DNA of 64,000 nucleotides from positions 186,001 to 250,000 of the forward strand of contig NIVC01000035.1 in NCBI GenBank assembly GCA_002269645.1, in the 5' to 3' direction. This DNA is from Macrostomum lignano (lineage: Eukaryota). The notes beneath the pieces were generated by a model that was not told the origin of the DNA, did not search any database, and worked only from the letters and a program-made list of their open reading frames with translations. The translations under genes were made by a program, and so were the position numbers. Below are positions 1 through 63,353 of this stretch, one piece after another (within the stretch, counting starts at the first letter, position 1; each line of letters opens with the position of its first letter).

Positions 1-21560
<21,560 letters not shown>

Positions 21561-21739
21561 ACCAGCTAAAGAGTTATTGCAGAGCTCAGCTATTGCAGTG
21601 CCACATGCCACAGTGTATTGTAGTGTCCGTTACAGGTGCATAACACTCTGCAGCGCTATTCTTTCCAAACTATGAACATCACGTACATTTTCTTTAAAAT
21701 CACGTTTTTGATTCATTTTCAAAACATGCATCATCAGAT

Positions 21740-22003
21740 GGTTGTAGCCTAGTGGTCAGAGCGTCGGACTCTGATTCTCGACCCACTTCGGAACAATTTG
21801 TGTCTTGAGCAAGACACTTAACTCTACATTGCTTCAGTTCACCCAGCTGTAAAATGGGTGGTAATTGAGGGTGTGTGTGGCAACCCCCAGTCCTTGGACT
21901 GAACAGCCGTATGCAGCCTTCAAATGCGCCGCCTACGGCTGAGCTGTCGGTTGCACATAAAACCATTAGGACAGATGAAATCAAATTTTATTCCTATTAT
22001 TAT
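21740..22003 (+). mobile_element. Second copy of the CORE/Meta-like tRNA-SINE
   Basis: GGTTGTAGCCTAGTGGTCAGAGC head, GTGTCTTGAGCAAGACACTTAAC...CCCAGCTGTAAAATGGGT core, CCCCCAGTCCTTGGACTG body and tattattat tail align with 983-1303. Confidence 0.75.
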
Positions 22004-39929: not shown

Positions 39930-40980
<1,051 letters not shown>

Positions 40981-42005
40981 TGCATTAAGGCACTTACAAA
41001 GCTCGCAAAGTGCGGGAAGATTCTGATGCAGACTTCTAGCAGAAGCAGTCAAAGCAGATTTGCTACTGTAGTTGCCTTTCACAGACGGGAAATGGCAATA
41101 ATAAGGGTACTTGCTGTGATCAAAGACTTGAATATGGTGCAGCCATGCGCTGCTATCCTCCATAACTCAAAAAACGAAGCTAAAAAGCCCTAGCAGCCTA
41201 ACTTGTGCTGTCTATAAAATAGACTGCGTGAAAGTTTTACTAAGAAATGGAAACAATCGCAAGTATATTCTGTATAACAGAATACCTTTTAAGTCGGTGG
41301 CGATGGAGAACTTGTTTTTCAGACCAAGTGCCTAACAACAGTTTGGTTTGTTGAGTTTTTAGCTGGAAAACTATATTCTCTGAGCCTTCGTCTCACCCAT
41401 TTCTCCACCACTCTGCCAGTCTCCAAAATCTCAGCCAATGAGCAGCCGAGGTTTGTGTAAAAAACTTTTCTTTCTACACCGAACTCTCGGTCCAAATATT
41501 GAGTACAATTTTCTATGGTTACTCAGAGTATATGAGACTGCACATTGAACAATTATAGAAATGTACAGTCCGACAACGTCATCACTGAGATGCTTAACAC
41601 AGAGCAGCGCGGAGCATGGGTCCCAAGCCAAAAGCAAACAAGTACTCCAACTACGCATTCTCTTTCGGTCATAAAAATAATGTACAACAGAACCCCTTGC
41701 CAGCTACTTCTAATACTGAAGAGTGGTTTTTGTTGGTCACATGATTAAACCTGACAACCATATATGCTTAGCCGCACCTTGTTCTATCTTCTCTATCCTT
41801 CTCTCACTCTCTCTCCCCTCTCATCCACGTTTTCTTTTCATTTCATCTTTCTTTCCAGAGACTTGACAAGCAACAAAAACTGCATCGGTATAGACAAAAG
41901 AATAGTTATTAAAAATCTGGAAAATTCTGGAAATAAAAAAGTTATTTTTATCTCTCATAACTAGATATAGAACACACAAAGAGGTGCTGTATTATCTATC
42001 TAAAA

Positions 42006-48000: not shown

Positions 48001-48902
48001 CAAAAAGGTTGACTAATGAATCTGTAGTTGAACATAAAGAAATGATCGAATGTTTCACTTATTTTTACTCTCTTTCCTGGCATCTACATGTGTAGCAGCT
48101 CTTAGTCTAGTCTTGTATCAGCTCATCCCTTCGAGTCAGCCCCAAAGTCTCGAGCTGCAGCTACCTGTACATGTACAAAATCCAATCCAACGATGCTATA
48201 CGAGAGAGGCTCCATGAATACAAGCAACAACTGATGGTGATGGGTTTCCAGCATCAGGCTTCCTGCAGTATAGTGAGAGTTTAGATTTTATCGATCGCTC
48301 CGTGTGCAGAGGGCGCAGTTGTGTGTGGGGGGTGTGGAAACTACTCAGCCTTGTCTCCCGAATTCTTCCTATCCTCTCCTCGACGTAAGCTTACTAAGAG
48401 GATCCATGCTCCCAGACAAAACGGCTTTCCTCCTCTGATGAATAACCCTCCACACAAGCGTTTTTGGGAGAAGCGGAGCTCCCAAGCGCTGGGGATCGAG
48501 CTGCATAGCTCGTGTTCGAGGGGGGTCGCGGGGTCCGTTTTCCCTTTCTCTCTTGCCCCCACCCCATCACCTCCAAACCTATGCGGGACCGCAGTCCTCC
48601 CCATCCTCCTCTTATCTCTCTCTCAGCTTCTGCTTCAGCTCCATCTCGTCTCGCTTGCCGCAAAATAGCAAAGGTGATCCGAGGGTGGAGGAAGGAATAG
48701 GGGAGAGAGGTGAAGTTGGAGGATTGGATGGAGGAAGCTGGAACCAAGCGCTGAACCCGCCATGCCACCAGAGACTGAAGTGGAGGATCCAAAGGCTGCC
48801 CCCCTGCCTCAACCCATAAAATGCCATCCCATCGCTTTGCGGTGTCTGCATTGCTGAATCACACAGAAGCAGTCTGCTTGATCAACAAACACAGCAGCAG
48901 TC

Positions 48903-51900
48903 ATGACAGTGGACTCCGAGCCAAACAATAATTCCAGCAAATTGCTGCCGTCATCTCCGAAGCCCCTGATCCACGTTCTCTGCTGTCCCAGCTGTCCCTA
49001 CATGTGCCTGCAGGAGAGCGTCTTGATCGACCACGTGACCGGCGCTCACCCGGAGCCGCCATCCGCCGACGCCGGCGCAGAATCCGTTAACCAGCTGAAG
49101 TTGTACCGCTGCAAGCTGTGCGACTCCGTGTCAACGCAGAAGTGCCTGATGTTGGAGCACGCCGCCGTGTTTCACGGTGCCGAGTCGCGTCAGGTGAGGC
49201 GGTGGCTGTTCTTAGAATTTCGAATAATTTGAGCAAACTGATGAAAAGAATCAATCAGTGTAGCATCAGCCAATGAGAATGTGCAGGGAGTGAGTGCTGC
49301 CTTCTTTCTCCCTTAGATCCTATTGGTAACTATAGGCTCTAACGCCAACAACAGACACAATGAGGCCCCTCAACAGACACAATGAGGCCCCTCAACAGAC
49401 AATTAGGCACCCTCAACAGACACAATGAGGCCCCTCAACAGACACAATGAGGCACCCTCAACAGACACAATGAGGCCCCTCAACAGACACAATGAGGCAC
49501 CCTCAACAGACACAATGAAGCACCACCATCAGACACAATGAAGCACCACCAACAGACACAATGAGGCATCACCAACAGACACAATGAGGCATCACCAACA
49601 GACACAATGAGGCATCACCAACAGACACAATGAGGCTTCCTCAACAGACACAATGAGGCACCCTCAACAGACACAATGAGGCACCACCAACAGACAATGA
49701 GGCACCCTCAACAGACACAATGAGGCCCCTCAACAGACACAATGAGGCCCCTCAACAGACACAATGAGGCACCCTCAACAGACACAATGAGGCCCCTCAA
49801 CAGACACAATGAGGCCCCTCAACAGACACAATGAGGCCCCTCAACAGACACAATGAGGCCCCACAACAGACACAATGAGGCACCCACAACAGACACAATG
49901 AGGCCCCTCAACAGACACAATGAGGCCCCTCAACAGACACAATGAGGCCCCTCAATAGACACAATGAGGCCCCTCAACAGACACAATGAGGCACCCTCAA
50001 CAGACACAATGAGGCCCCTCAACAGACACAATGAGGCCCCTCAACAGACACAATGAGGCCCCTCAACAGACACAATGAGGCCCCTCAATAGACACAATGA
50101 GGCCCCTCAATAGACACAATGAGGCCCCTCAACAGACACAATGAGGCCCCTCAACAGACACAATGAGGCCCCTCAACAGACACAATGAGGCACCCTCAAC
50201 AGACACAATGAGGCCCCTCAACAGACACAATGAGGCCCCTCAACAGACACAATGAGGCCCCTCAACAGACACAATGAGGCCCCTCAATAGACACAATGAG
50301 GCATCACCAACAGACACAATGAGGCACCCACAACAGCCACAATGAGGCATCACCAACAGACACAATGAGGCACCCACAACAGCCACAATGAGGCACCCAC
50401 AACAGACACAATGAGGCACCCACAACAGACACAATGAGGCACCACCAACAGACACAATGAGGCATCACCAACAGACACAATGAGGCACCCACAACAGCCA
50501 CAATGAGGCCCCCCAACAGCCACAATGAGGCACCCACAACAGACACAATGAGGCACCCACAACAGACACAATGAGGCACCCACAACAGACACAATGAGGC
50601 ACCACCAACAGACACAATGAGGCATCACCAACAGCCACAATGAGGCCCCCACAACAGCCACAATGAGGCCCCCACAACAGCCACAATGAGGCCCCCACAA
50701 CAGCCACAATGAGGCACCCACAACAGACACAATGAGGCACCCACAACAGACACAATGAGGCACCCACAACAGCCACAATGAGGCACCACCAACAGACACA
50801 ATGGGGCGCTACCAAAAATTTTAAAAAGGCTCTCAGAGAGAAAGTTGCTGACTTTTTAGCTGAATTACAACTTGAAACATTTTTGTTGCAGCAAGAAGAT
50901 GATTTGCTTGTGGTTCGAGACTTAAAGCTGCCAGGAAATTATGGAGCACCAGCATGCCAGGAGCAGAAAACTCAGAACTCCGCTTTGAAGCAGCAGGCAT
51001 CAACAAGCATTGCTACCGGATCAAGAAAGCGGAAACTGACAGTTCCGGTGAGGGCTCTGACAATGTCTACTCTCACCTCACTGACAGTGTCTACTCTCAC
51101 CTCTCTGACAATGTTTACTCTCACCTCTCTGACAGTGTTTACTCTCACCTCTCTGACAATGTCTACTTTGACCTTTCTGACAATGTCTACTCTCACCTCT
51201 CTGACAATGTCTACTCTCACCTCTCTGACAATGTCTACTCTCACCTCTCTGACAATGTCTACTCTCACCTCTCTGACAATGTCTACTCTCACCTCTCTGA
51301 CAGTGTCTACTCTCACCTCTCTGACAATGTCTACTCTCACCTCTCTGACAGTGTCTACTCTCACCTCTCTGACAATGTCTACTCTGACCTCTCTGACAAT
51401 GTCTAATCTCACCTCTCTGACAATATCTACTCTCACCTCTCTGACAATATCTACTCTCACCACTCTGACAATATCTACTCTGACCTCTCTGACAATGTGA
51501 CCTACTCTCACCTCTCTGACAGTGTCTACTCTCACCTCTCTGACAATGTCTACTCTCACCTCTCTGACAGTGTCTACTCTCACCTCTCTGACAATGTCTA
51601 CTCTCACCTCTAACAATGTCTACTCTAATTTCTCTTATGTCTACTCTACCAAACCCCCAGCTGTACGGAGCACTGGTGTCCCGCTTATTTAATTCCATTA
51701 AACTCCCCAGGAAAAGTTGCCAACCGATCCCAGCCAAGGGCCTGAGAGTCAGCCAGCAGTGAGAGCTGAAGCTGACACCACTGCTCAGCCGCTGCCATCG
51801 CTGGAGTTCCATCCCAGAAACGGCGTCGCTGAGAACCTGAACTTAATTCGAAGTAGCAGCCAACAGCATCAGCTGGTTGTGAGACAGGCAAATAAAAGCA

Positions 51901-54018
51901 ACAGACAGCAGCATCAGAAATTTCTACCACAGCAACAGCAGAATCTGCTGCAGTCTCCGTCACAGAGAACTGACACCACCGTTCTAGCCATTGGCAACTA
52001 CCCAGCAACCGGCACCACAGCTTTGGCAATTTCATCTGGACTTTACCTGCCGTTTAAACTGTGGGAGGCGGCCAGACTCACTCAGCAGCAGCAGCAGCAG
52101 CAGCAGCATCTTCATCATCAGCTGCTCACGTCTGCTGCCGCTGTGACCGCCGTGACCGGGACGCCGCTCCACAGCCTGAGCTTCAATGGTGCCACCGCTA
52201 TGCAGCTGGGAGCCGCCACCCCTGCGGCACTGCAGGTGAGGAAGAGGGTGGGAGAGAGTGAGAGGGTGAGGGAGAGGGAGAGGGCGAGGGAGGGGTTGAG
52301 GGAGAGGGTGAGGATGAGGGAAAGAGGGGGTGAGAGTGAGAGAGAGAGGATGAGAGAGAGGGTGAGAGAGAGAGGGTGAGAGTGAGGGTGAGGGTGAGGG
52401 TGAGAGGGTGATGTGAGGGACAAAAGTGAGAGGGAGAATTTGAGAGTGGGTTAGATTGATCTAAGAAATCGTCCAACTGAAACTTAGAGAATAAATAAAA
52501 ACTGGTTTCATTTTCAATTTTATTTTCCATTAAAAATCTATCCTTAGTATGCTGCTACACTACTAATAAGTAGCAATGCTAGATAGTGATATTTATTGTT
52601 GGCCAATTGCCAATCAAACCCTTTGCCAGCTCCCAGTGACAGCCGTGGAACCGAAGCAGCAGCCGCAGTCGCAGGAAGACTTTGCCTCATCAGTGTTGGA
52701 CTTATCCGTGAAGGAAGCAAAACTCTTGGCGTCTCTTCAGCAGCAGCAGCAGCAGAAGCAGCAGAAGCAGTCAGCAGCCGCTTCTTCATCGAATTCAAAG
52801 CGGTCAGCCGGGCGCATCCGGCGACAAAATCGACAACGAGCCGGAGGTGCTCGCGGCGCGCGCGGTCGCAGTCATCAGAGCAGCCCGTCGTTGAAGGACC
52901 CGACGCTGGACACGGCTACAGTCGACTCCGAGCAGCAGCGAGCGGACTCGCCGCAGTCGCAGGGCAAAACTCAGCGTCAGAATTTTACTCCGACTCAGAA
53001 TCGCCAGCTGTTGAAGTGGTTCTGCGAGCACAGCGACAAGCCCTACCCGACTGGGGAGGACACCAAGGCGCTATCGGCTCTCACCGGATTGAACTATGCT
53101 CAGGTGAAGAAATGGTTCGCTAATAAACGGATGCGATCCAAGTCTACCGTAGCTTCGACTGTCGCTGATGGCGAGGTTGACGATGCAGCCTCCGATGGAG
53201 TCGAGTTGGTGATCCCCGTACCAGCGCAACCCGACTGGGAAGAAGAGGCTCAGATGAGAGAGGTGAGCGAGGGGATTTCAATCTGGGGACTTACATCTTT
53301 TTAGCATGGAGATCAAGGGAATCCTATTCGGAAGTCTCAATTGGGAAATCCGACTTGAGAAATCTAATTCGGAGAATTCTTTACGGATTATTTCATTCAT
53401 CTGGGGAATCCCATTCGGGGAATCCCATTCGGGGAATCTCATTCGGGGAATCCCATTCGGGGAATCCCGTTCGGGGAATCCCATTCGATGAATCTCATTC
53501 GGGGAATCCCATTCGGGGAATTCCATTCGATGAATCTCATTCGGAGAAGCCTGTTCGGGGATTTCCATTCAGGGTATTTAATTCCTGGAATTCGATTAGA
53601 GGATCACATTCTAGGAATCTAATGGGGGATTTCTATTTGGGGAATCCTACTCTGAGAATCTCCATTCTGAAAATCTCATTCGGAAATCCAATTCGGGAAT
53701 CCGACTGGGGAATCCCTTGCGGGAAATTCCGTTTGGGACATTATATTCGGGGAATCCAATTTGAATCTCATTCGTAAAGTACGAGGTATTCTTTCTGGTA
53801 ATTTTAAATTTCTACATGTATTGAGGTGAATATATGTAAACATGTAACGAAATCTCGAAATGGAAATTCTCAAAGAAAACTCTTTTATGCTGAAAGAGTC
53901 TATAATTACAATATTCTATAATTAAACTGCAATATTTTCGCGATTTCAGCAGTCCGATGATGGAAATCAATTGCAAGATTGCGAGCAACATCTCTTGGAG
54001 GAGAGTTCCACCGCCTGA
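48903..54018 (+). CDS. C2H2 zinc-finger + TALE-class homeodomain transcription factor (spiralian TALE/SPILE-like)
   Basis: Exons 48903-49193, 50892-51047, 51711-52235, 52630-53262, 53950-54018(TGA), all phase 0 and GT-AG. Exon 1 has two CxxC..HxxxxH fingers. Exon 4 has VLDLS (52693-52707) and the homeodomain QRQNFTPTQNRQLLKWFCEHSDKPYPTGEDTKALSALTGLNYAQVKKWFANKRMR with the TALE PYP loop. Confidence 0.8.
49340..50800. repeat. 22-bp minisatellite (CAACAGACACAATGAGGCCCCT), about 66 copies
   Basis: Directly visible in intron 1 of the TALE gene. Confidence 0.98.
51056..51640. repeat. 24-bp minisatellite (CTGACAATGTCTACTCTCACCTCT), about 24 copies
   Basis: Directly visible in intron 2; source of the TMSTLTSL repeat ORF. 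Confidence 0.97.
52236..52440. repeat. GA-rich polypurine low-complexity tract
   Basis: gagagggtgag-type repeats right after the exon 3 donor. Confidence 0.85.
53395..53770. repeat. Degenerate 15-bp repeat (GGGGAATCCCATTCG)
   Basis: Directly visible in intron 4. Confidence 0.8.
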
Positions 54019-54629
54019 ACTTTAAATGAAGGAAGTTTGGAATAAGTTTTAAATTACAATAACAACAGTATTGTACGTTGGTTTCACTGTTGTTTAAACG
54101 CTCGAAGTTTCATTAATTTTCTTGTAAAAATAAATTTTTCAGTGTGCTAAACCGTACCAGTAAAACAAAAAAATTAACGTAATCAAAGTTCAGTCGATAA
54201 ACCATGATGTAATGTGGTAGGCCGATGCCGATAAATATTAAAACAAAATATTGCAATTTTTTTTTTTTTAACAACAAATTTGGGTCAATGTTTACCTAAT
54301 AAAACGCTTTTTCGTAATGATATTTAAGTACACTACTTACTAAAGTAGTATCCGTGACTGTGTATTTTTATCTACAGTACATATATGTTCGTGTGAGACT
54401 TTAAATGAGACAAAAAAGTTTGTATATTATTAACGTGAAGACCTTACCCATCAGTGAGAGTAGACCCTTCTAAACAGTGAGAGTAGACCCTACTCATCGC
54501 AAAGAGTAGACCCAGCTGCTCTACTCATAAATATTTGGTGTTGTCTGTACAGTCGTGAATAAAGAGAAGGGGATTGCTATTCAAAGTCACATCGAGTCGG
54601 TGAGACGAAGACGGTTTGCATCGAGTCAA

Positions 54630-57608
54630 TCAATCCCGCACCTCCGCCTGCTGCATCAGCAATTTCTTCTGTTTCATACGTCGATTTTGAAACCAAGTTT
54701 TCACCTGGGCGTCGGTGAGGCCCAAAGCCTGGGCCAGCAAATCCCTGTCAGTCGGACTCAGGTAGGCCTGCTCGCGGAATGTGGCCTCCAGCTGGAGCAG
54801 CTGCAGGTCGCTAAAAACCGTTCGGGGCTGACGGCGGCGCTTCAAATTGCCAGCACTTGATGATGATGAAGAATCGGCTGCTGGGAGGGCTGACGCTGAA
54901 GTTGCTAAGTCAAGCGGGGAGGATAATAGAGAGATTTGCAGTTAAACTGAATTTAATGTAATTTTATCAACACACTTTAGACCGCTGACCCGCACCCTGT
55001 GGACACACGCTCACACAGCGTGTACAGCAGCCCTGACTTTCGAATCGTCAGTCATGTACACTCTGTGTCTTGAGGGTTGGCCCTCATGGGCTACAGTCTG
55101 TGATTGTTTGGCGCTACAGTCTGTCATGGTTTGGCGCTACAGTCTGTTCACGGTTTGGCGCTACAGTCTGTCATGGTTTGGCGCTACGGTCTGTGGTGGT
55201 TTGGCGCTACAGTCTGTTCACGGTTTGGCACTACAGTCTGTCATGGTTTGGCGCTACAGTCTGTCATGGTTTGGCGCTACAGTCTGTGATTGTTTCGCAC
55301 TACAGTCTGTCATGGTTTGGCGCTACAGTCTGTGATTGTTTCGCACTACAGTCTGTCATGGTTTGGCGCTACAGTCTGTCATGGTTTGGCGCTACAGTCT
55401 GTTATGGTTTGGCGCTACAGTCTGTCATGGTTTGGCGCTACAGTCTGTCATGGTTTGGCGCTACAGTCTGTGATTGTTTCGCGCTACAGTCTGTCATGGT
55501 TTGGCGCTACAGTCTGTCATGGTTTGGCGCTACAGTCTGTCATGGTTTGGCGCTACAGTCTGTGATTGTTTCGCGCTACAGTCTGTCATGGTTTGGCGCT
55601 ACAGTCTGTCATGGTTTGGCGCTACAGTCTGTCATGGTTTGGCGCTACAGTCTGTCATGGTTTTGCGCTACAGTCTGTTATGGTTTGGCGCTACAGTCTG
55701 TTATGGTTTGGCGCTACAGTCTGTCATGGTTTGGCGCTACAGTCTGTCATGGTTTTGCGCTACAGTCTGTGATTGTTTCGCGCTACAGTCTGTCATGGTT
55801 TGGCGCTACAGTCTGTCATGGTTTGGCGCTACAGTCTGTCATGGTTTGGCGCTACAGTCTGTGATTGTTTCGCGCTACAGTCTGTCATGGTTTGGCGCTA
55901 CAGTCTGTCATGGTTTGGCGCTACAGTCTGTCATGGTTTGGCGCTACAGTCTGTGATTGTTTCGCGCTACAGTCTGTCATGGTTTGGCGCTACAGTCTGT
56001 CATGGTTTGGCGCTACAGTCTGTCATGGTTTGGCGCTACAGTCTGTCATGTTTTGGCGCTACAGTCTGTCATGGTTTTGCGCTACAGTCTGTTCACGGTT
56101 TGGCGCTACAGTCTGTTCACGGTTTGGCGCTACAGTCTGTTCACGGTTTGGCGCTACGGTCTGTGGTGGTTTGGCGCTACAGTCTGTTCACGGTTTGGCA
56201 CTACAGTCTGTCATGGTTTGGCGCTACAGTCTGTCATGGTTTGGCGCTACAGTCTGTGATTGTTTGGCACTACAGTCTGTCATGGTTTGGCGCTACAGTC
56301 TGTGAATTTTAGCGCTACAGTCTGTGAATTGTTTGGCGCTACAGTCTGTGAATTTTAGCGCTACAGTCTGTGAATTGTTTGGCGCTACAGTCTGTGAATT
56401 GTTTAGCGCTACAGTCTGTAAGTATAAATTTGTAGTTTTACGTTGCAGAAACTCCAATTATAACCTGTAGATTTGGGATGCCATGTCTGTCAGCAAACAG
56501 GCAGCATTGGCAAATATCCAAACAATTAAGCATCTCAACTCATCTCAATGACACTCGTTGCTGCTATGCAAGCTTATTATAAAAACTCATTGTCTCAAAT
56601 TTGTTATTTCGATTCTCTCGCAGCTGGAGCCGTCTCAAAATGCATCAATCAAAATTATTGCACAAGATAAAATTACCGTTTTTATTTTCATGAGAACAGG
56701 CCACTGAGAGAAGTTTACATTGTTATCATTTAGATGGTTAAGAGTGAAAGTGACTGTTTTAACTGGCTCATACAGTTTGGGTTAAACAATTGAGCCTATC
56801 AATTAAGACTGCTTCCAGCCCTTAACCGCAATAATTTCAGACAGACCAGCGCATGCTAGGTGTCACATTACAGTCAGACTATACAGCTATAAGCTCAATT
56901 TCTACATTTGAGTCTCTCCGGCTCTGAGACCACCGCAGTGTCCTCTCAGTGTGTGGCGTTTATCCTCATGGAGCTTTGTTTGAGAACGATTAGATTATTT
57001 GAGCTGAATTCCCGAGCTTGCTTGACTGACAATTGTTTAATTAGGCATTTGGGTGTTCCTTAATAGCTGCTAATGCAGTAACGAACGATATGGATTTAGC
57101 TGTGAAAATTAGTAAAATTTATAAATCAATGGACTAGTTGCGTTTATTATCTATATCTGCTTATGAACTGACTGACTGACTGACTGACTGACTGACTGAC
57201 TGACTGACTGACTGACTGACTGACTGACTGACTGACTGACTGATTATTGATTTTAGATGTAAGATTTCAATTTCTGAAAAACACACCAGAGAGTTTTTCG
57301 CTGCAAAGTGCAGTCAAAAACTCAGCAATAACGTGGCCATCAATCTTACCGGTCTTATCGACTTGAAGATCATTACAAGTTTTGTCAACGGAAGAGTTGG
57401 GGGCCGCTGCATGATCTCTTTTTGTGACCCTTCTTTTTTCGTTTCGTTGCTGCACGCTGCTATAACTTGCAAGAGCAGATGATGGAGCAGCCAGCATCCA
57501 GTAGTTGAACAGGGCAATTTCCATCAATTGAAGAGTTTCCGTCTTGCTCCGACTCGTCACCGGAGGTCGAAGCAGATTCTCAATCATAAAACTATTTGCT
57601 TGTTGCAT
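54630..57608 (-). CDS. ANTP/NK-class homeobox protein, Bsx/Barx-like, 177 aa
   Basis: Exons 57608-57350 and 54904-54630 join in phase 1 (acc g|gtaaga...gacttag|ca act). N-terminal eh1/TN-like SFMIENLL; homeodomain RRRQPRTVFSDLQLLQLEATFREQAYLSPTDRDLLAQALGLTDAQVKTWFQNRRMKQKK. Bsx versus Barx cannot be resolved by eye. Confidence 0.88.
55088..56420. repeat. 23-bp minisatellite (GGCGCTACAGTCTGTCATGGTTT), about 58 copies
   Basis: Directly visible in the homeobox intron. Confidence 0.98.
57166..57243. repeat. (TGAC)n microsatellite
   Basis: Directly visible. Confidence 0.98.
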
Positions 57609-62153: not shown

Positions 62154-63353
62154 TTATTTAATCCAGTCAGCATCGCGAGAAGCCGCAGGCCAGATGCACA
62201 GAAAGAAAAGCGCATTGAACGCGCTGGCGCCCAAATAGCTAGCAAAGCAGATTTTGTCTTTGTGTCGCACTAAAAAGGATAGAAAAACGGCCAAGCGTCG
62301 GGCAATTATCGACCGTCGTTTCTCAGCGGACTCGGACTGCGTGCGATGAGCTGCCACTTGAGGAAAACGGAAAACTGCAACAAAGGTGAAGAAGATCAGT
62401 ATAAGCATCTGGGTGATTAGGAATGTTCCAACCAGAGGAATGATGTTCATCGACTTGGGCGCGGATTGGGAAGCGATGAGGACGTACAGCGTCATAGACA
62501 TGATGATGGCGATTGACACGTTAGCTCGGTCGCCTTGCTGCTCAGCGAAGAACATGATACTAGCCAGTAGCGACAACAGTTCGTACGGCACAATCATCAG
62601 GATTGCGTAATACGTCACGCGACGTTGCAGAAAGAATCGCAAATTGACAAACTGGAACGTGGAGCTGTTATCTACAACCATGTACTTGACGCTGTGGGTG
62701 AGTCCGGCCAAGTCCCACTCGCCTACACTAAAAAAAGCGCTGCTATCAGACGTACTGGCACTCATTCTGCTGGTCAGAGTAAAGCTAAAAACGCTGGATG
62801 GCGAGTTGATAGCTCCGATTTCCAGTGTGCACACCTGTCGATCAAATGGAAATAAACGCATATCCAGAGAGCAAGGAAATTGGATCACTGTGTAAATGTA
62901 GGTAAATACGGAACCATCCGGAGACGCGATTGTTTCGAGGAATTTCGAGTTGCGCAAATCGAACAACTCGACCGATTTAGCGTTCCAATAGCCGATGTCG
63001 GGTATTCACAGGCTGTTCCTGTCAAGTCGTATCTGATTCACGCCAGTCTCAGTAGCGTTCCAGGCTAGTCTTGGATCGCGCCACGACATCAGTACCCAGC
63101 CGGACCATTCTAGCAGTTCTTCATCACCTAGTCCGTAGACTGTCTTCACATCAATGTTCACATGTACGGTGGTGTTGTAACCACTGAGACTGGGTGGCTG
63201 CATAGACCGGCACTGGGACAGATACTGCGGGCCGACGCTCTGAGTCAGGGCTCTGCAGACGGGTCCGTCAGTGTTGGTTGACGGATCCAGGCAGTCTGAA
63301 GGCTGCAGCGTTAGAGCCAAGGCTAGAAACAGTAATTGCATGTGTTCTTGCAT
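62154..63353 (-). CDS. Intronless nAChR-like Cys-loop ligand-gated ion channel subunit with one in-frame TGA (63006-63008); pseudogene or recoded
   Basis: ORFs 63006-63353 and 62154-62966 are in the same frame. Joined they read signal peptide...WRDPRLAWN...RNSL*IPDIGYWN...CSLDMRLFPFDRQVC (Cys loop)...M1 YYAILMIVP, M2 GDRANVSIAIIMSMTL, M3, short loop, M4. Confidence 0.88.

What the first reader, a model, noticed from the sequence alone, without database searches (positions are those of the whole stretch)
48903..54018. Zinc-finger + CtBP-motif + TALE homeodomain gene resembling spiralian-specific TALE (SPILE) genes
Seen: two C2H2 fingers, a VLDLS motif and a TALE homeodomain with HSDKPYP and QVKKWFANKRMR in one five-exon frame. 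Established: canonical TALE families have WFxNxR variants WFINAR (Meis/Pknox/Tgif), WFANAR (Irx/Mkx) or WFGNKR (Pbx), whereas WFANKR occurs in the lophotrochozoan TALE expansions tied to early spiral-cleavage patterning; PxDLS/VLDLS recruits CtBP. Inference: a lineage-specific TALE repressor whose domain combination may be undescribed in this clade. This is the best candidate for new developmental biology in the window.
Basis: partly seen in the sequence, partly recalled or inferred. Interest (0 to 1): 0.7.

Follow-up and report, generated by a model that had tools for sequence, protein, structure and literature searches.

The report
Flatworm zinc-finger TALE homeobox gene
This is a real five-exon gene of the flatworm Macrostomum lignano for a transcription factor that joins two zinc fingers, two short co-repressor docking motifs and a TALE homeodomain; the same layout occurs in flukes and tapeworms, so it is an uncharacterised flatworm-wide gene family, not a one-off.

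Summary
Exons 48903-49193, 50892-51047, 51711-52235, 52630-53262 and 53950-54018 (+ strand, all phase 0, all GT..AG) read as one 557-aa protein. It has two C2H2 fingers, VLDLSVK and a 63-aa TALE homeodomain (Pfam Homeobox_KN 1.4e-12; best structural matches Exd/PBX).

The window is Macrostomum lignano or a very close relative. A second, homeologous locus keeps all five exons intact. No single public model joins fingers and homeobox for this gene.

Trematode and cestode proteins, and one M. lignano paralogue, carry the same blocks in the same order: finger, finger, RKxxxPx[KR], [AVI]LD[LM]Sx[KR], one TALE homeodomain. It fits the published internal NuRD/RBBP4-binding consensus and is completed only when exon 2 is spliced to exon 3.

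The homeodomain is not Pbx, Irx or Mkx. It sits among the spiralian WFANKR-type TALEs, but without support. It lacks their usual NT[KRL] tail and has a Pbx-like RQNF arm.

Best reading: a flatworm-specific zinc-finger TALE factor that probably represses through CtBP and NuRD. SPILE membership and an early-cleavage role are untested. Interest is moderate.

The parts
48903..49193 (+). Exon 1 (aa 1-97): start codon and both C2H2 fingers
   Evidence: ATG with an in-frame stop 8 codons upstream, and donor CAG|gtgagg. It is 99.7% identical in the homeologous locus L001, with one synonymous change. The UniRef model P0002 has the same start and the same junction.
48984..49049 (+). Zinc finger 1, C28-x2-C31-x12-H44-x4-H49
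   Evidence: All four ligands are invariant in 5 of the 6 sequences of the finger alignment; the M. lignano paralogue P0006 has a degenerate first finger. AlphaFold2 pLDDT is 85-90, with helix 38-48.
49110..49175 (+). Zinc finger 2, C70-x2-C73-x12-H86-x4-H91
   Evidence: All four ligands and an S-T pair are invariant in all 6 sequences of the finger alignment. pLDDT is 78-90, with helix 80-91. A profile of the finger pair matches solved C2H2 pairs (CTCF, ZHX1).
50892..51047 (+). Exon 2 (aa 98-149): a short strand and helix that pack on the finger domain, a linker, and the first six residues of the RKxxxPxK motif
   Evidence: acceptor ttgcag|, donor CCG|gtgagg. The P0002 model uses both junctions. 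Residues 99-108 are folded, with pLDDT about 86.
51030..51047 (+). RKLTVP, the first part of the internal NuRD-interaction-type motif RKLTVPEK (aa 144-151). The last two codons (EK) are at 51711-51716 in exon 3
   Evidence: RKxxxPx[KR] occurs in the window protein, the P0002 model of the homeologous copy, the three near-identical Mlig033171 paralogue models (P0012, P0151, P0152), the cestode P0078 and the trematodes P0016, P0159 and P0020. It appears in 1.8% of shuffles of this protein. The consensus RK(x)xxPxK/R comes from PMC11602157.
51711..52235 (+). Exon 3 (aa 150-324): disordered, Q-rich linker
   Evidence: pLDDT below 50 except for helix 265-284. Models P0001 and P0002 overlap here.
52630..53262 (+). 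Exon 4 (aa 325-535): LDLS motif, basic stretch and the whole homeodomain
   Evidence: The exon 3-4 and 4-5 junctions are the same as in the NCBI model P0001 of the homeologue.
52693..52713 (+). VLDLSVK (aa 346-352), a CtBP-type motif with V in place of P/G
   Evidence: [AVI]LD[LM]S.[KR] is present in all 12 family models that extend that far, always between the RK motif and the homeodomain. It appears in 0.16% of shuffles.
52963..53151 (+). TALE homeodomain, 63 aa (aa 436-498), not interrupted by an intron
53950..54018 (+). Exon 5 (aa 536-557 plus the stop codon), an acidic tail
   Evidence: The C-terminus is the same as in P0001.
54129..54134 (+). AATAAA, the likely polyadenylation signal
   Evidence: Read directly from the sequence; it starts 111 nt after the stop codon.

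Best explanation
The locus is an intact five-exon gene of Macrostomum lignano (or a very close relative). It encodes a 557-aa nuclear transcription factor of a flatworm-wide family. The family layout is: an N-terminal pair of C2H2 fingers, a long disordered linker with two conserved short linear motifs, and one C-terminal TALE homeodomain.

Proposed mechanism. The homeodomain binds DNA; it keeps R5, W48, F49, N51 and R53, has A50, and has a Pbx/SPILE-like recognition helix. The finger pair adds a second nucleic-acid or protein contact. RKLTVPEK recruits NuRD through RBBP4. VLDLSVK recruits CtBP. The protein would therefore act as a sequence-specific repressor, working much as ZEB/zfh-1 proteins do.

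Shown: the gene structure, the folds, the family and the conservation of the motifs.
Inferred: DNA binding, both co-repressor contacts and repression itself.

Origin: a non-canonical TALE gene of the Pbx/SPILE neighbourhood that acquired fingers at or before the split of Macrostomorpha from the lineage leading to the parasitic flatworms (Neodermata).
For: Gene model:
- All exons are phase 0 and all introns GT..AG.
- The homeologous locus L001 keeps all five exons open and all splice sites.
- The finger and homeobox exons show 6 synonymous and 1 non-synonymous changes. The three other exons show 3 synonymous and 8 non-synonymous.
- Two independent partial public models of the homeologue cover exons 1-3 and exons 3-5 with the same junctions.
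- The fold continues across the exon 1/2 junction.
- The conserved RKxxxPxK motif is completed only by exon 2-3 splicing.

Organism: 97% identity to BOX15_Mlig026076g1.

Family: Schistosoma mekongi, Heterobilharzia, Calicophoron and Mesocestoides proteins have the same blocks in the same order. The Echinostoma model and a second Heterobilharzia model lack the N-terminal finger part. The M. lignano paralogue P0006 has both fingers (the first degenerate) and the homeodomain but not the RK motif.

Folds: Pfam, PDB, AlphaFold2 and Foldseek all agree.

Motifs: the internal NuRD-interaction consensus is published with crystal and mutational data (PMC11602157). CtBP is present in flatworms (PMC9907507). 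Both motifs lie in segments with pLDDT below 50, as docking motifs usually do.
Against: - No cDNA or RNA-seq was seen for this locus. The only public models of this gene are partial, and one (P0001) has a non-canonical 5' junction.
- The two copies are too similar (98.9% in exons, about 96.6% in unique intron sequence) for a strong test of selection: 9 synonymous and 9 non-synonymous changes overall.
- The LDLS motif lacks the P or G that the CtBP consensus (recalled from the ELM resource and the HIC1 GLDLSKK example) requires.
- The paralogue P0006 lacks the RK motif.
- No binding or repression data exist.
- The finger pair matches only generic C2H2 pairs, so its role is open.
Confidence: 0.6

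Rival explanations
1. It is a true SPILE gene, the flatworm representative of the spiralian TALE expansion (for example the counterpart of TALE-IV/SPILE-B). As in limpets, it would act in oocytes or cleavage stages to specify blastomere fates.
For: - QVKKWFANKR is typical of the SPILE-type clades.
- The 17 reference homeodomains that score best against the flatworm profile are all SPILE-type.
- The neighbour-joining tree puts the flatworm clade next to the first homeodomain of TALE-IV.
- Most of the top non-flatworm hits are mollusc or annelid-like proteins with two homeodomains, WMANKR plus WFANKR.
- Five of those carry a canonical PLDLSx[KR] motif.
Against: - There is no bootstrap support. 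The sister group is purely SPILE-type in only 106 of 500 replicates.
- 0 of 8 flatworm homeodomains have the NT[KRL] tail that 44 of 61 SPILE-type references have, and the N-terminal arm is RQNF, as in Pbx (RRNF).
- The protein has one homeodomain and two fingers, unlike any published SPILE.
- No expression data are available.
- Pbx homeodomains themselves score 85 bits on a SPILE-type profile, so profile scores do not discriminate.
Confidence: 0.2
2. It is a much-diverged member of the zinc-finger class of homeobox genes (ADNP-like or ZHX-like). Its fingers would be the ancestral part and its homeodomain would only look like a TALE domain.
For: - Pfam ADNP_N matches the finger pair of the cestode orthologues: 28.9 bits (cut-off 27) for P0163 and 26.3 bits for P0078, at profile positions 73-133, that is the first two ADNP fingers.
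- ZHX1 fingers (PDB 2ghf) match in one ungapped stretch.
- ZHX N-termini carry an RRKSTTP-like motif (from memory).
Against: - The window protein and the trematode proteins do not reach ADNP_N at E<=1.
- CTCF finger pairs score as well as ADNP or ZHX1, so the similarity may be generic.
- The homeodomain has the three-residue TALE insertion. It scores 62-72 bits against Pbx and SPILE-type domains but only 9.5 bits (ADNP) and 20 bits or less (ZHX1) on the memory sequences.
- There are two fingers, not nine, and no PxVxL motif was seen.
Confidence: 0.08
3. The fingers and the homeobox belong to two separate transcription units, or to mutually exclusive isoforms. In that case the 557-aa protein is not made.
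For: No public model of this gene joins them. P0002 stops at the end of exon 3 and P0001 starts inside exon 2 in another frame. M. lignano uses trans-splicing (own knowledge).
Against: - The frame is continuous and phase 0 through all junctions in both homeologues.
- P0001 and P0002 overlap in exon 3.
- The 5' junction of P0001 is non-canonical and sits on a microhomology, so it looks like an artefact.
- Orthologues and the paralogue P0006 carry both domains in one model.
- The RK motif spans the exon 2/3 junction.
Confidence: 0.07

Closest known systems
Spiralian non-canonical TALE genes (SPILE; TALE clades II-XIX of Barton-Owen et al. 2018, PMC6118893), especially the two-homeodomain TALE-IV/SPILE-B group
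   Same: A 63-aa TALE homeodomain with PYP and QVKKW[FM]ANKR. Restricted to Spiralia. These are the best-scoring relatives outside flatworms. Some members also carry a PLDLSx[KR] motif.
   Different: One homeodomain rather than two. Two N-terminal C2H2 fingers. An RKxxxPx[KR] motif. No NT[KRL] tail after the homeodomain. A Pbx-like RQNF arm. Phylogenetic placement is unsupported.
Pbx/Extradenticle (PBC class)
   Same: Best sequence and structure matches among solved structures. Shares the RxNF arm and the N51-K52-R53 triplet.
   Different: No PBC-A or PBC-B domain. A50 instead of G50. Only 32-43% homeodomain identity. Sister to Pbx alone in 2 of 500 bootstraps.
ZEB/zfh-1 (zinc-finger class homeobox repressors)
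   Same: Works alike on paper: C2H2 fingers plus a homeodomain plus a CtBP-type motif plus a NuRD-interaction motif in one protein. ZEB2 is listed among the proteins carrying an internal NuRD-interaction motif in PMC11602157.
   Different: ZEB has two finger clusters flanking a 60-aa non-TALE homeodomain. No sequence relationship was detected here.
ADNP and ZHX/HOMEZ (zinc-finger class)
   Same: An N-terminal pair of CX2CX12HX4H fingers with a long linker. Weak ADNP_N and ZHX1 matches.
   Different: Their homeodomains are 60 aa and unrelated in score. The number of fingers and homeodomains differs. The finger similarity is no stronger than to CTCF.
TGIF (a TALE repressor that binds CtBP through PLDLS; own knowledge)
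   Same: A TALE homeodomain plus a CtBP-type motif, so the same logic of repression.
   Different: TGIF has WFINAR and no fingers. Homeodomain identity is about 32%.
Unassigned TALE genes of parasitic flatworms (Tsai et al. 2013, as cited by Olson et al. 2018, PMC6225667)
   Same: That paper cites at least eight unassignable TALE genes as an expansion 'specific to parasitic flatworms', with extradenticle as the best BLAST match. The trematode and cestode orthologues found here probably belong to that set.
   Different: The correspondence was not checked gene by gene. The presence of the family in free-living Macrostomum shows it is not specific to parasites.

Membership tests
TALE class homeodomain | Three extra residues between helix 1 and helix 2 (a 63-aa domain) | tested here: met
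   Pfam Homeobox_KN E=1.4e-12. Gapless alignment to Exd/PBX1. Fits the 63-column published TALE alignment. AlphaFold2 helices at 445-457, 466-476 and 480-498. Top Foldseek hits are Exd/PBX.
TALE class homeodomain | PYP at positions 24-26, with W48, F49, N51 and R53 | tested here: met
   KPYP and WFANKR are read directly from the sequence.
SPILE / spiralian non-canonical TALE | The homeodomain falls in the SPILE clade in a phylogeny | tested here: inconclusive
   The neighbour-joining tree nests it there. Support is absent: flatworm monophyly in 236 of 500 replicates, and a purely SPILE-type sister group in 106 of 500.
SPILE / spiralian non-canonical TALE | W[FML]ANKR-type recognition helix | tested here: met
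   VKKWFA followed by NKR in 7 of 8 flatworm homeodomains (P0006 has WFANRR). The same type is common in the published clades.
SPILE / spiralian non-canonical TALE | NT[KRL] at homeodomain positions 61-63 (a frequent signature, not a formal criterion) | tested here: not met
   44 of 61 references have it; 0 of 8 flatworm homeodomains do.
SPILE / spiralian non-canonical TALE | Maternal or cleavage-stage expression and a role in blastomere specification | not testable with these tools
   No expression data could be reached. The gene identifiers were not found in the paper library.
Pbx (PBC) | PBC-A and PBC-B domains upstream of the homeodomain | tested here: not met
   Only homeodomain families were hit in Pfam at E<=1.
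Pbx (PBC) | WFGNKR, and the homeodomain clustering inside Pbx | tested here: not met
   A50. Scores of 37-53 bits on a Pbx profile. Sister to Pbx alone in 2 of 500 replicates.
Irx / Mkx | WFANAR, and the homeodomain clustering inside Irx or Mkx | tested here: not met
   K52 instead of A52. 29-37% identity. Irx or Mkx was never the sole sister group in 500 replicates.
Zinc-finger class homeobox (ADNP) | ADNP_N region (PF19627) above its cut-off | tested here: inconclusive
   Window protein: no hit at E<=1. Cestode fragment P0163: 28.9 bits against a cut-off of 27. P0078: 26.3 bits. Trematodes: none.
Zinc-finger class homeobox (ADNP, ZHX) | A 60-aa homeodomain of ADNP or ZHX type | tested here: not met
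   The TALE insertion is present.
CtBP-binding proteins (PxDLS motif) | [PG]-[LVI]-D-L-S-x-[KR] in a disordered region | tested here: inconclusive
   The LDLSVK core is present, conserved and in a disordered segment. Position 1 is V, A or I, not P or G.
CtBP-binding proteins (PxDLS motif) | Physical binding to CtBP | not testable with these tools
   Flatworms do have CtBP (PMC9907507).
NuRD/RBBP4-binding proteins (internal NuRD-interaction motif) | RK(x)xxPx[KR] at an internal position | tested here: met
   RKLTVPEK at residues 144-151. RKATTPG[RK] in trematodes and the cestode. RKSHVPER in a paralogue. The consensus is from PMC11602157.
NuRD/RBBP4-binding proteins (internal NuRD-interaction motif) | Physical binding to RBBP4 | not testable with these tools
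   This needs a pull-down or fluorescence-polarisation assay.

The most novel reading that the evidence does not exclude
Flatworms as a whole, from Macrostomorpha to flukes and tapeworms, possess a previously undescribed homeobox architecture: a TALE homeodomain fused to an N-terminal C2H2 finger pair, with paired NuRD-type and CtBP-type docking motifs. This family would be the platyhelminth offshoot of the Pbx/SPILE radiation. If so, the spiralian TALE expansion reached flatworms in a remodelled, repressor-dedicated form that could be studied by RNAi in M. lignano.
Probability: 0.35. Interest if true: 0.55.

Novelty: new variant of a known kind. Interest (0 to 1): 0.42.

Why it matters
TALE homeobox genes are core developmental regulators. 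The spiralian-specific TALE expansion has been tied to spiral-cleavage fate specification in molluscs and annelids, but flatworms were left out of the latest classification because few sequences were available (PMC6118893).

A conserved flatworm family that joins a TALE homeodomain to zinc fingers and two co-repressor motifs adds a new domain architecture to the class. It also shows that the 'parasite-specific' unassigned TALE genes have free-living relatives. It offers a tractable candidate, since RNAi and transgenesis exist in M. lignano, for asking what lineage-specific TALE repressors do in flatworm development, the germline or regeneration.

The finding is not a surprise at the level of mechanism. 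Every part is a known kind of module.

Tried and rejected
- The word-indexed search with the whole protein returned only the homeologue, because poly-Q words filled the candidate list.
- The word-indexed search with the finger profile found only cestode N-terminal fragments.
- Scoring against family profiles was dropped as a classifier. Pbx homeodomains score higher on the SPILE-type profile than the flatworm ones do.
- My first impression that introns are about 8-10% diverged between the homeologues was wrong; it came from the minisatellite arrays. Unique intron sequence is about 96.6% identical, against 98.9% for exons.
- AlphaFold2 of the N-terminal 123 residues without an alignment failed (pLDDT 39.8) and was not used.
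- Tsai et al. 2013 is not held in the library, so the published list of unassigned flatworm TALE genes could not be matched to this family.
- The gene identifiers Mlig026076 and Mlig033171 occur in no searchable paper.

Full report
**The observation.** I read window 48500-54500 and joined five + strand segments: 48903-49193, 50892-51047, 51711-52235, 52630-53262 and 53950-54018. Every segment length is a multiple of three. Every intron begins with GT and ends with AG, and the junctions look like ordinary metazoan splice sites. The joined frame is 1674 nt, that is 557 codons and a stop. An in-frame stop lies eight codons upstream of the ATG. AATAAA starts 111 nt after the stop codon.

The protein has two CX2CX12HX4H fingers (C28..H49 and C70..H91). 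It has VLDLSVK at residues 346-352 and a homeodomain at 436-498 with HSDKPYP and QVKKWFANKRMR. Pfam gives Homeobox_KN E=1.4e-12 and Homeodomain E=2e-11. The best solved relatives are Extradenticle and PBX1, aligned without a gap through the helix 1-helix 2 loop.

**The organism and a second copy.** A protein search returned BOX15_Mlig026076g1 of Macrostomum lignano at 97% identity. The window is therefore from this flatworm or a very close relative. The contig of that protein (L001, NIVC01000981.1) is a second, homeologous locus and not the window itself.

All five exons, their splice sites and the open frame are kept in L001, giving a 553-aa product. The exons differ at 19 of 1674 positions (98.9% identity). 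Unique intron sequence is about 96.6% identical, and the intron minisatellite arrays differ in length. The copies are too similar for a strong test of selection: 9 synonymous and 9 non-synonymous codon changes overall. The split is suggestive, though. The finger and homeobox exons have 6 synonymous and 1 non-synonymous changes. The three other exons have 3 synonymous and 8 non-synonymous.

**Is it one transcript?** No public model joins the fingers and the homeobox for this gene.
- UniRef A0A1I8H3Y9 (P0002, 232 aa) covers exons 1, 2 and 3 with my junctions. It also removes an in-frame GT..AG segment inside exon 3.
- The NCBI model P0001 (360 aa) covers part of exon 3 and exons 4-5 with my junctions. 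However, it starts at an out-of-frame ATG inside exon 2 and reaches exon 3 through a junction that can only be CA..AG or AG..GC, on a CAGCAGGCC/CAGCAGCC microhomology. I take that 5' end to be an artefact.

The two partial models overlap in exon 3 and together span all five exons of the homeologue. Three further points link the exons. First, AlphaFold2, run with an alignment of relatives, folds residues 99-108 (exon 2) onto the finger domain (exon 1) with pLDDT about 86. Second, the conserved motif RKLTVPEK is split by intron 2 and exists only after exon 2-3 splicing. Third, orthologues and one paralogue carry fingers and homeodomain in a single model (below).

**The family.** I ran an exhaustive HMMER search of 1.84 billion representative proteins, then sequence inspection and name look-ups. 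These showed the same layout in the following proteins:
- Schistosoma mekongi (P0016, 1732 aa)
- Heterobilharzia americana (P0159)
- Calicophoron daubneyi (P0020, 1850 aa)
- Mesocestoides corti (P0078, 1017 aa)
- the M. lignano paralogue P0006 (419 aa), whose first finger is degenerate and which lacks the RK motif

Echinostoma caproni (P0018), a shorter Heterobilharzia model (P0034), and the M. lignano paralogues P0008 and P0012 have the C-terminal part only.

The conserved blocks, always in this order, are: finger 1, finger 2, GSR[KR]RKxxxPx[KR][IL], [AVI]LD[LM]Sx[KR], and the homeodomain. The homeodomain consensus is RQNFTPTQNRxLxxW[FY]xxHxxKPYPSxxDTKxLAxxxGLxYxQVKKWFANKRxRS. No protein outside flatworms among the 150 best hits combined fingers with the homeodomain. 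A relative as distant as the trematode ones (about 80 bits) would have ranked in the top 20. The family thus spans Macrostomorpha to Neodermata and looks flatworm-specific, within the limits of the database and of gene-model quality.

**Folds.** With the family alignment, AlphaFold2 gives three confident modules and nothing else:
- finger 1, pLDDT 85-90
- finger 2 plus a short extension, pLDDT 78-90
- a three-helix homeodomain, pLDDT 90-96

The other 393 residues are below pLDDT 50, including both short motifs. Foldseek against the PDB returns Exd and PBX1 first (TM 0.76-0.91 on the target, rmsd 0.9-1.7 Å), then PKNOX1, MEIS1 and TGIF1. A profile of the finger pair matches tandem C2H2 fingers of CTCF, HIC2, ZHX1 and BCL11A. 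These are genuine C2H2 fingers, but that comparison does not place them in any subfamily.

**Which TALE family?** I used the published spiralian TALE homeodomain alignment (Barton-Owen et al. 2018, supplementary file 8).

In a neighbour-joining tree of 93 references, 8 flatworm domains and 16 domains from the new hits, the flatworm sequences form their own clade (bootstrap 47-51%). That clade sits inside the non-canonical WFxNKR assemblage, next to the first homeodomain of TALE-IV and a leech clade. Support is lacking. In 500 bootstraps the sister group was purely SPILE-type 106 times, another non-canonical group or a mix of non-canonical groups 106 times, and Pbx alone twice. It was never Irx or Mkx alone, and was otherwise a large mixed clade.

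The flatworm profile scores SPILE-type domains best (up to 71.5 bits; the top 17 are all SPILE-type). Pbx follows at 62-64.5 bits and all other families score 53 bits or less. The reverse test does not discriminate, because Pbx scores 85 bits on a SPILE-type profile.

Two details argue against simple membership. None of the 8 flatworm domains has the NT[KRL] tail that 44 of 61 SPILE-type references have. And the N-terminal arm is RQNF, like RRNF of Pbx and unlike the SPILE-type references. There is no PBC domain. Positive assignment to SPILE did not happen either. I describe it as a flatworm-specific branch of the Pbx/SPILE neighbourhood.

**The fingers and the zinc-finger homeobox class.** Pfam ADNP_N matches the finger pair of the cestode orthologues at the position of ADNP fingers 1-2: 28.9 bits (cut-off 27) for fragment P0163 and 26.3 bits for P0078. 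The trematode proteins and the window protein give no match. ZHX1 aligns ungapped at 20 bits. These are leads only, since CTCF pairs score as well. The homeodomain test fails: 9.5 and 20 bits or less against those proteins, compared with 62-72 bits for Pbx and SPILE-type domains. I keep a distant ADNP/ZHX relationship of the fingers as a low-probability rival.

**How it probably works.** The homeodomain has the usual DNA-contact residues (R5, W48, F49, N51, R53), so DNA binding is the default inference. The two linear motifs suggest the output.

RKLTVPEK (144-151) fits the internal NuRD-interaction motif RK(x)xxPxK/R. That motif was defined by the crystal structure and an alanine scan of ZNF512B bound to RBBP4, with R, K, P and the last K/R being the essential positions (PMC11602157). 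The same pattern, RKATTPG[RK] or RKSHVPER, is present in the three trematode orthologues that include this region, in the cestode orthologue and in one M. lignano paralogue group. It occurs in 1.8% of shuffles of this protein.

VLDLSVK belongs to a motif, [AVI]LD[LM]Sx[KR], present in every family member that reaches that region. It occurs in 0.16% of shuffles. It has the DLSxK core of CtBP-binding motifs, but V, A or I where the consensus has P. From memory, HIC1 has G at that position. CtBP exists in flatworms (PMC9907507).

Both motifs lie in disordered sequence. I therefore propose a sequence-specific repressor that docks NuRD and CtBP. This is the logic of ZEB/zfh-1, without being a ZEB relative. 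The folds, the family and the motif conservation are shown. Binding and repression are inferred.

**Novelty and literature.** I found no paper describing a finger-plus-TALE protein in flatworms. Olson et al. 2018 mention at least eight unassignable TALE genes called an expansion 'specific to parasitic flatworms', with extradenticle as the best BLAST hit (PMC6225667). The orthologues found here are probably among them. The source list (Tsai et al. 2013) is not held. Barton-Owen et al. 2018 deliberately left flatworms out of the revised TALE classification. All database entries for the family are unnamed, 'Homeobox domain-containing protein' or 'C2H2-type domain-containing protein'.

I rate this a new variant of a known kind. 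The architecture is undescribed as far as I can tell, every module is familiar, and function is unknown. Interest is moderate.

Noticed in passing
window 54633-54845 (- strand): A second homeobox exon lies about 600 bp beyond the stop codon of the TALE gene, in convergent orientation. It is a standard 60-aa NKL-type homeodomain (KRRRQPRTVFSDLQLLQLEATF...VKTWFQNRRMKQKK). Pfam Homeodomain gives E=4.5e-22, and the best solved single-domain relatives are BarH-like 1 and 2. The rest of that gene was not modelled.
   Followed up: partly
window 49349-50807, 51055-51626, 53403-53761, 55090-56000+: Large minisatellites fill introns 1, 2 and 4 (23 bp x 65 copies, 24 bp x 24, 14 bp x 26) and the region downstream (23 bp x at least 40). 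The array lengths differ between the two homeologous loci, and this inflated my first estimate of intron divergence.
   Followed up: partly
L001 10001-10600 (NCBI model BOX15_Mlig026076g1): The annotated coding sequence of the homeologue starts at an out-of-frame ATG inside exon 2 and joins exon 3 through a non-canonical junction (CA..AG or AG..GC) on a short microhomology. This is probably an annotation or cDNA artefact that hides the zinc-finger exon.
   Followed up: yes
window 62154-63353 (- strand): Two reading frames match the ligand-binding and transmembrane regions of neurotransmitter-gated (Cys-loop) ion channels (Pfam Neur_chan_LBD 6.1e-14, Neur_chan_memb 2e-08). These are exons of an unrelated neighbouring gene.
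   Followed up: partly
proteins P0003-P0005, P0007, P0009, P0010, P0013-P0015, P0024, P0027: The highest-scoring non-flatworm hits are proteins made of 4 to 10 tandem TALE homeodomains (KWYDEHESNPYPTKEEK...WF.NER.RRKKAAG). Those whose source was looked up come from unnamed ENA or Logan contigs of a few kb. Their organism and function are unknown.
   Followed up: no
proteins P0047, P0048, P0069, P0077, P0079: Five TALE-IV-like proteins with two or three homeodomains (one is from the bivalve Tegillarca; the others look annelid-like or are unidentified) carry a canonical PLDLSx[KR] motif upstream of the first homeodomain. CtBP recruitment may therefore be widespread in this TALE group.
   Followed up: partly
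window 20001-22000 and 40001-42000: There are strong local GC-skew excursions (+0.36 and +0.28) in 2-kb bins. They are probably further strand-biased repeat arrays and were not examined.
   Followed up: no
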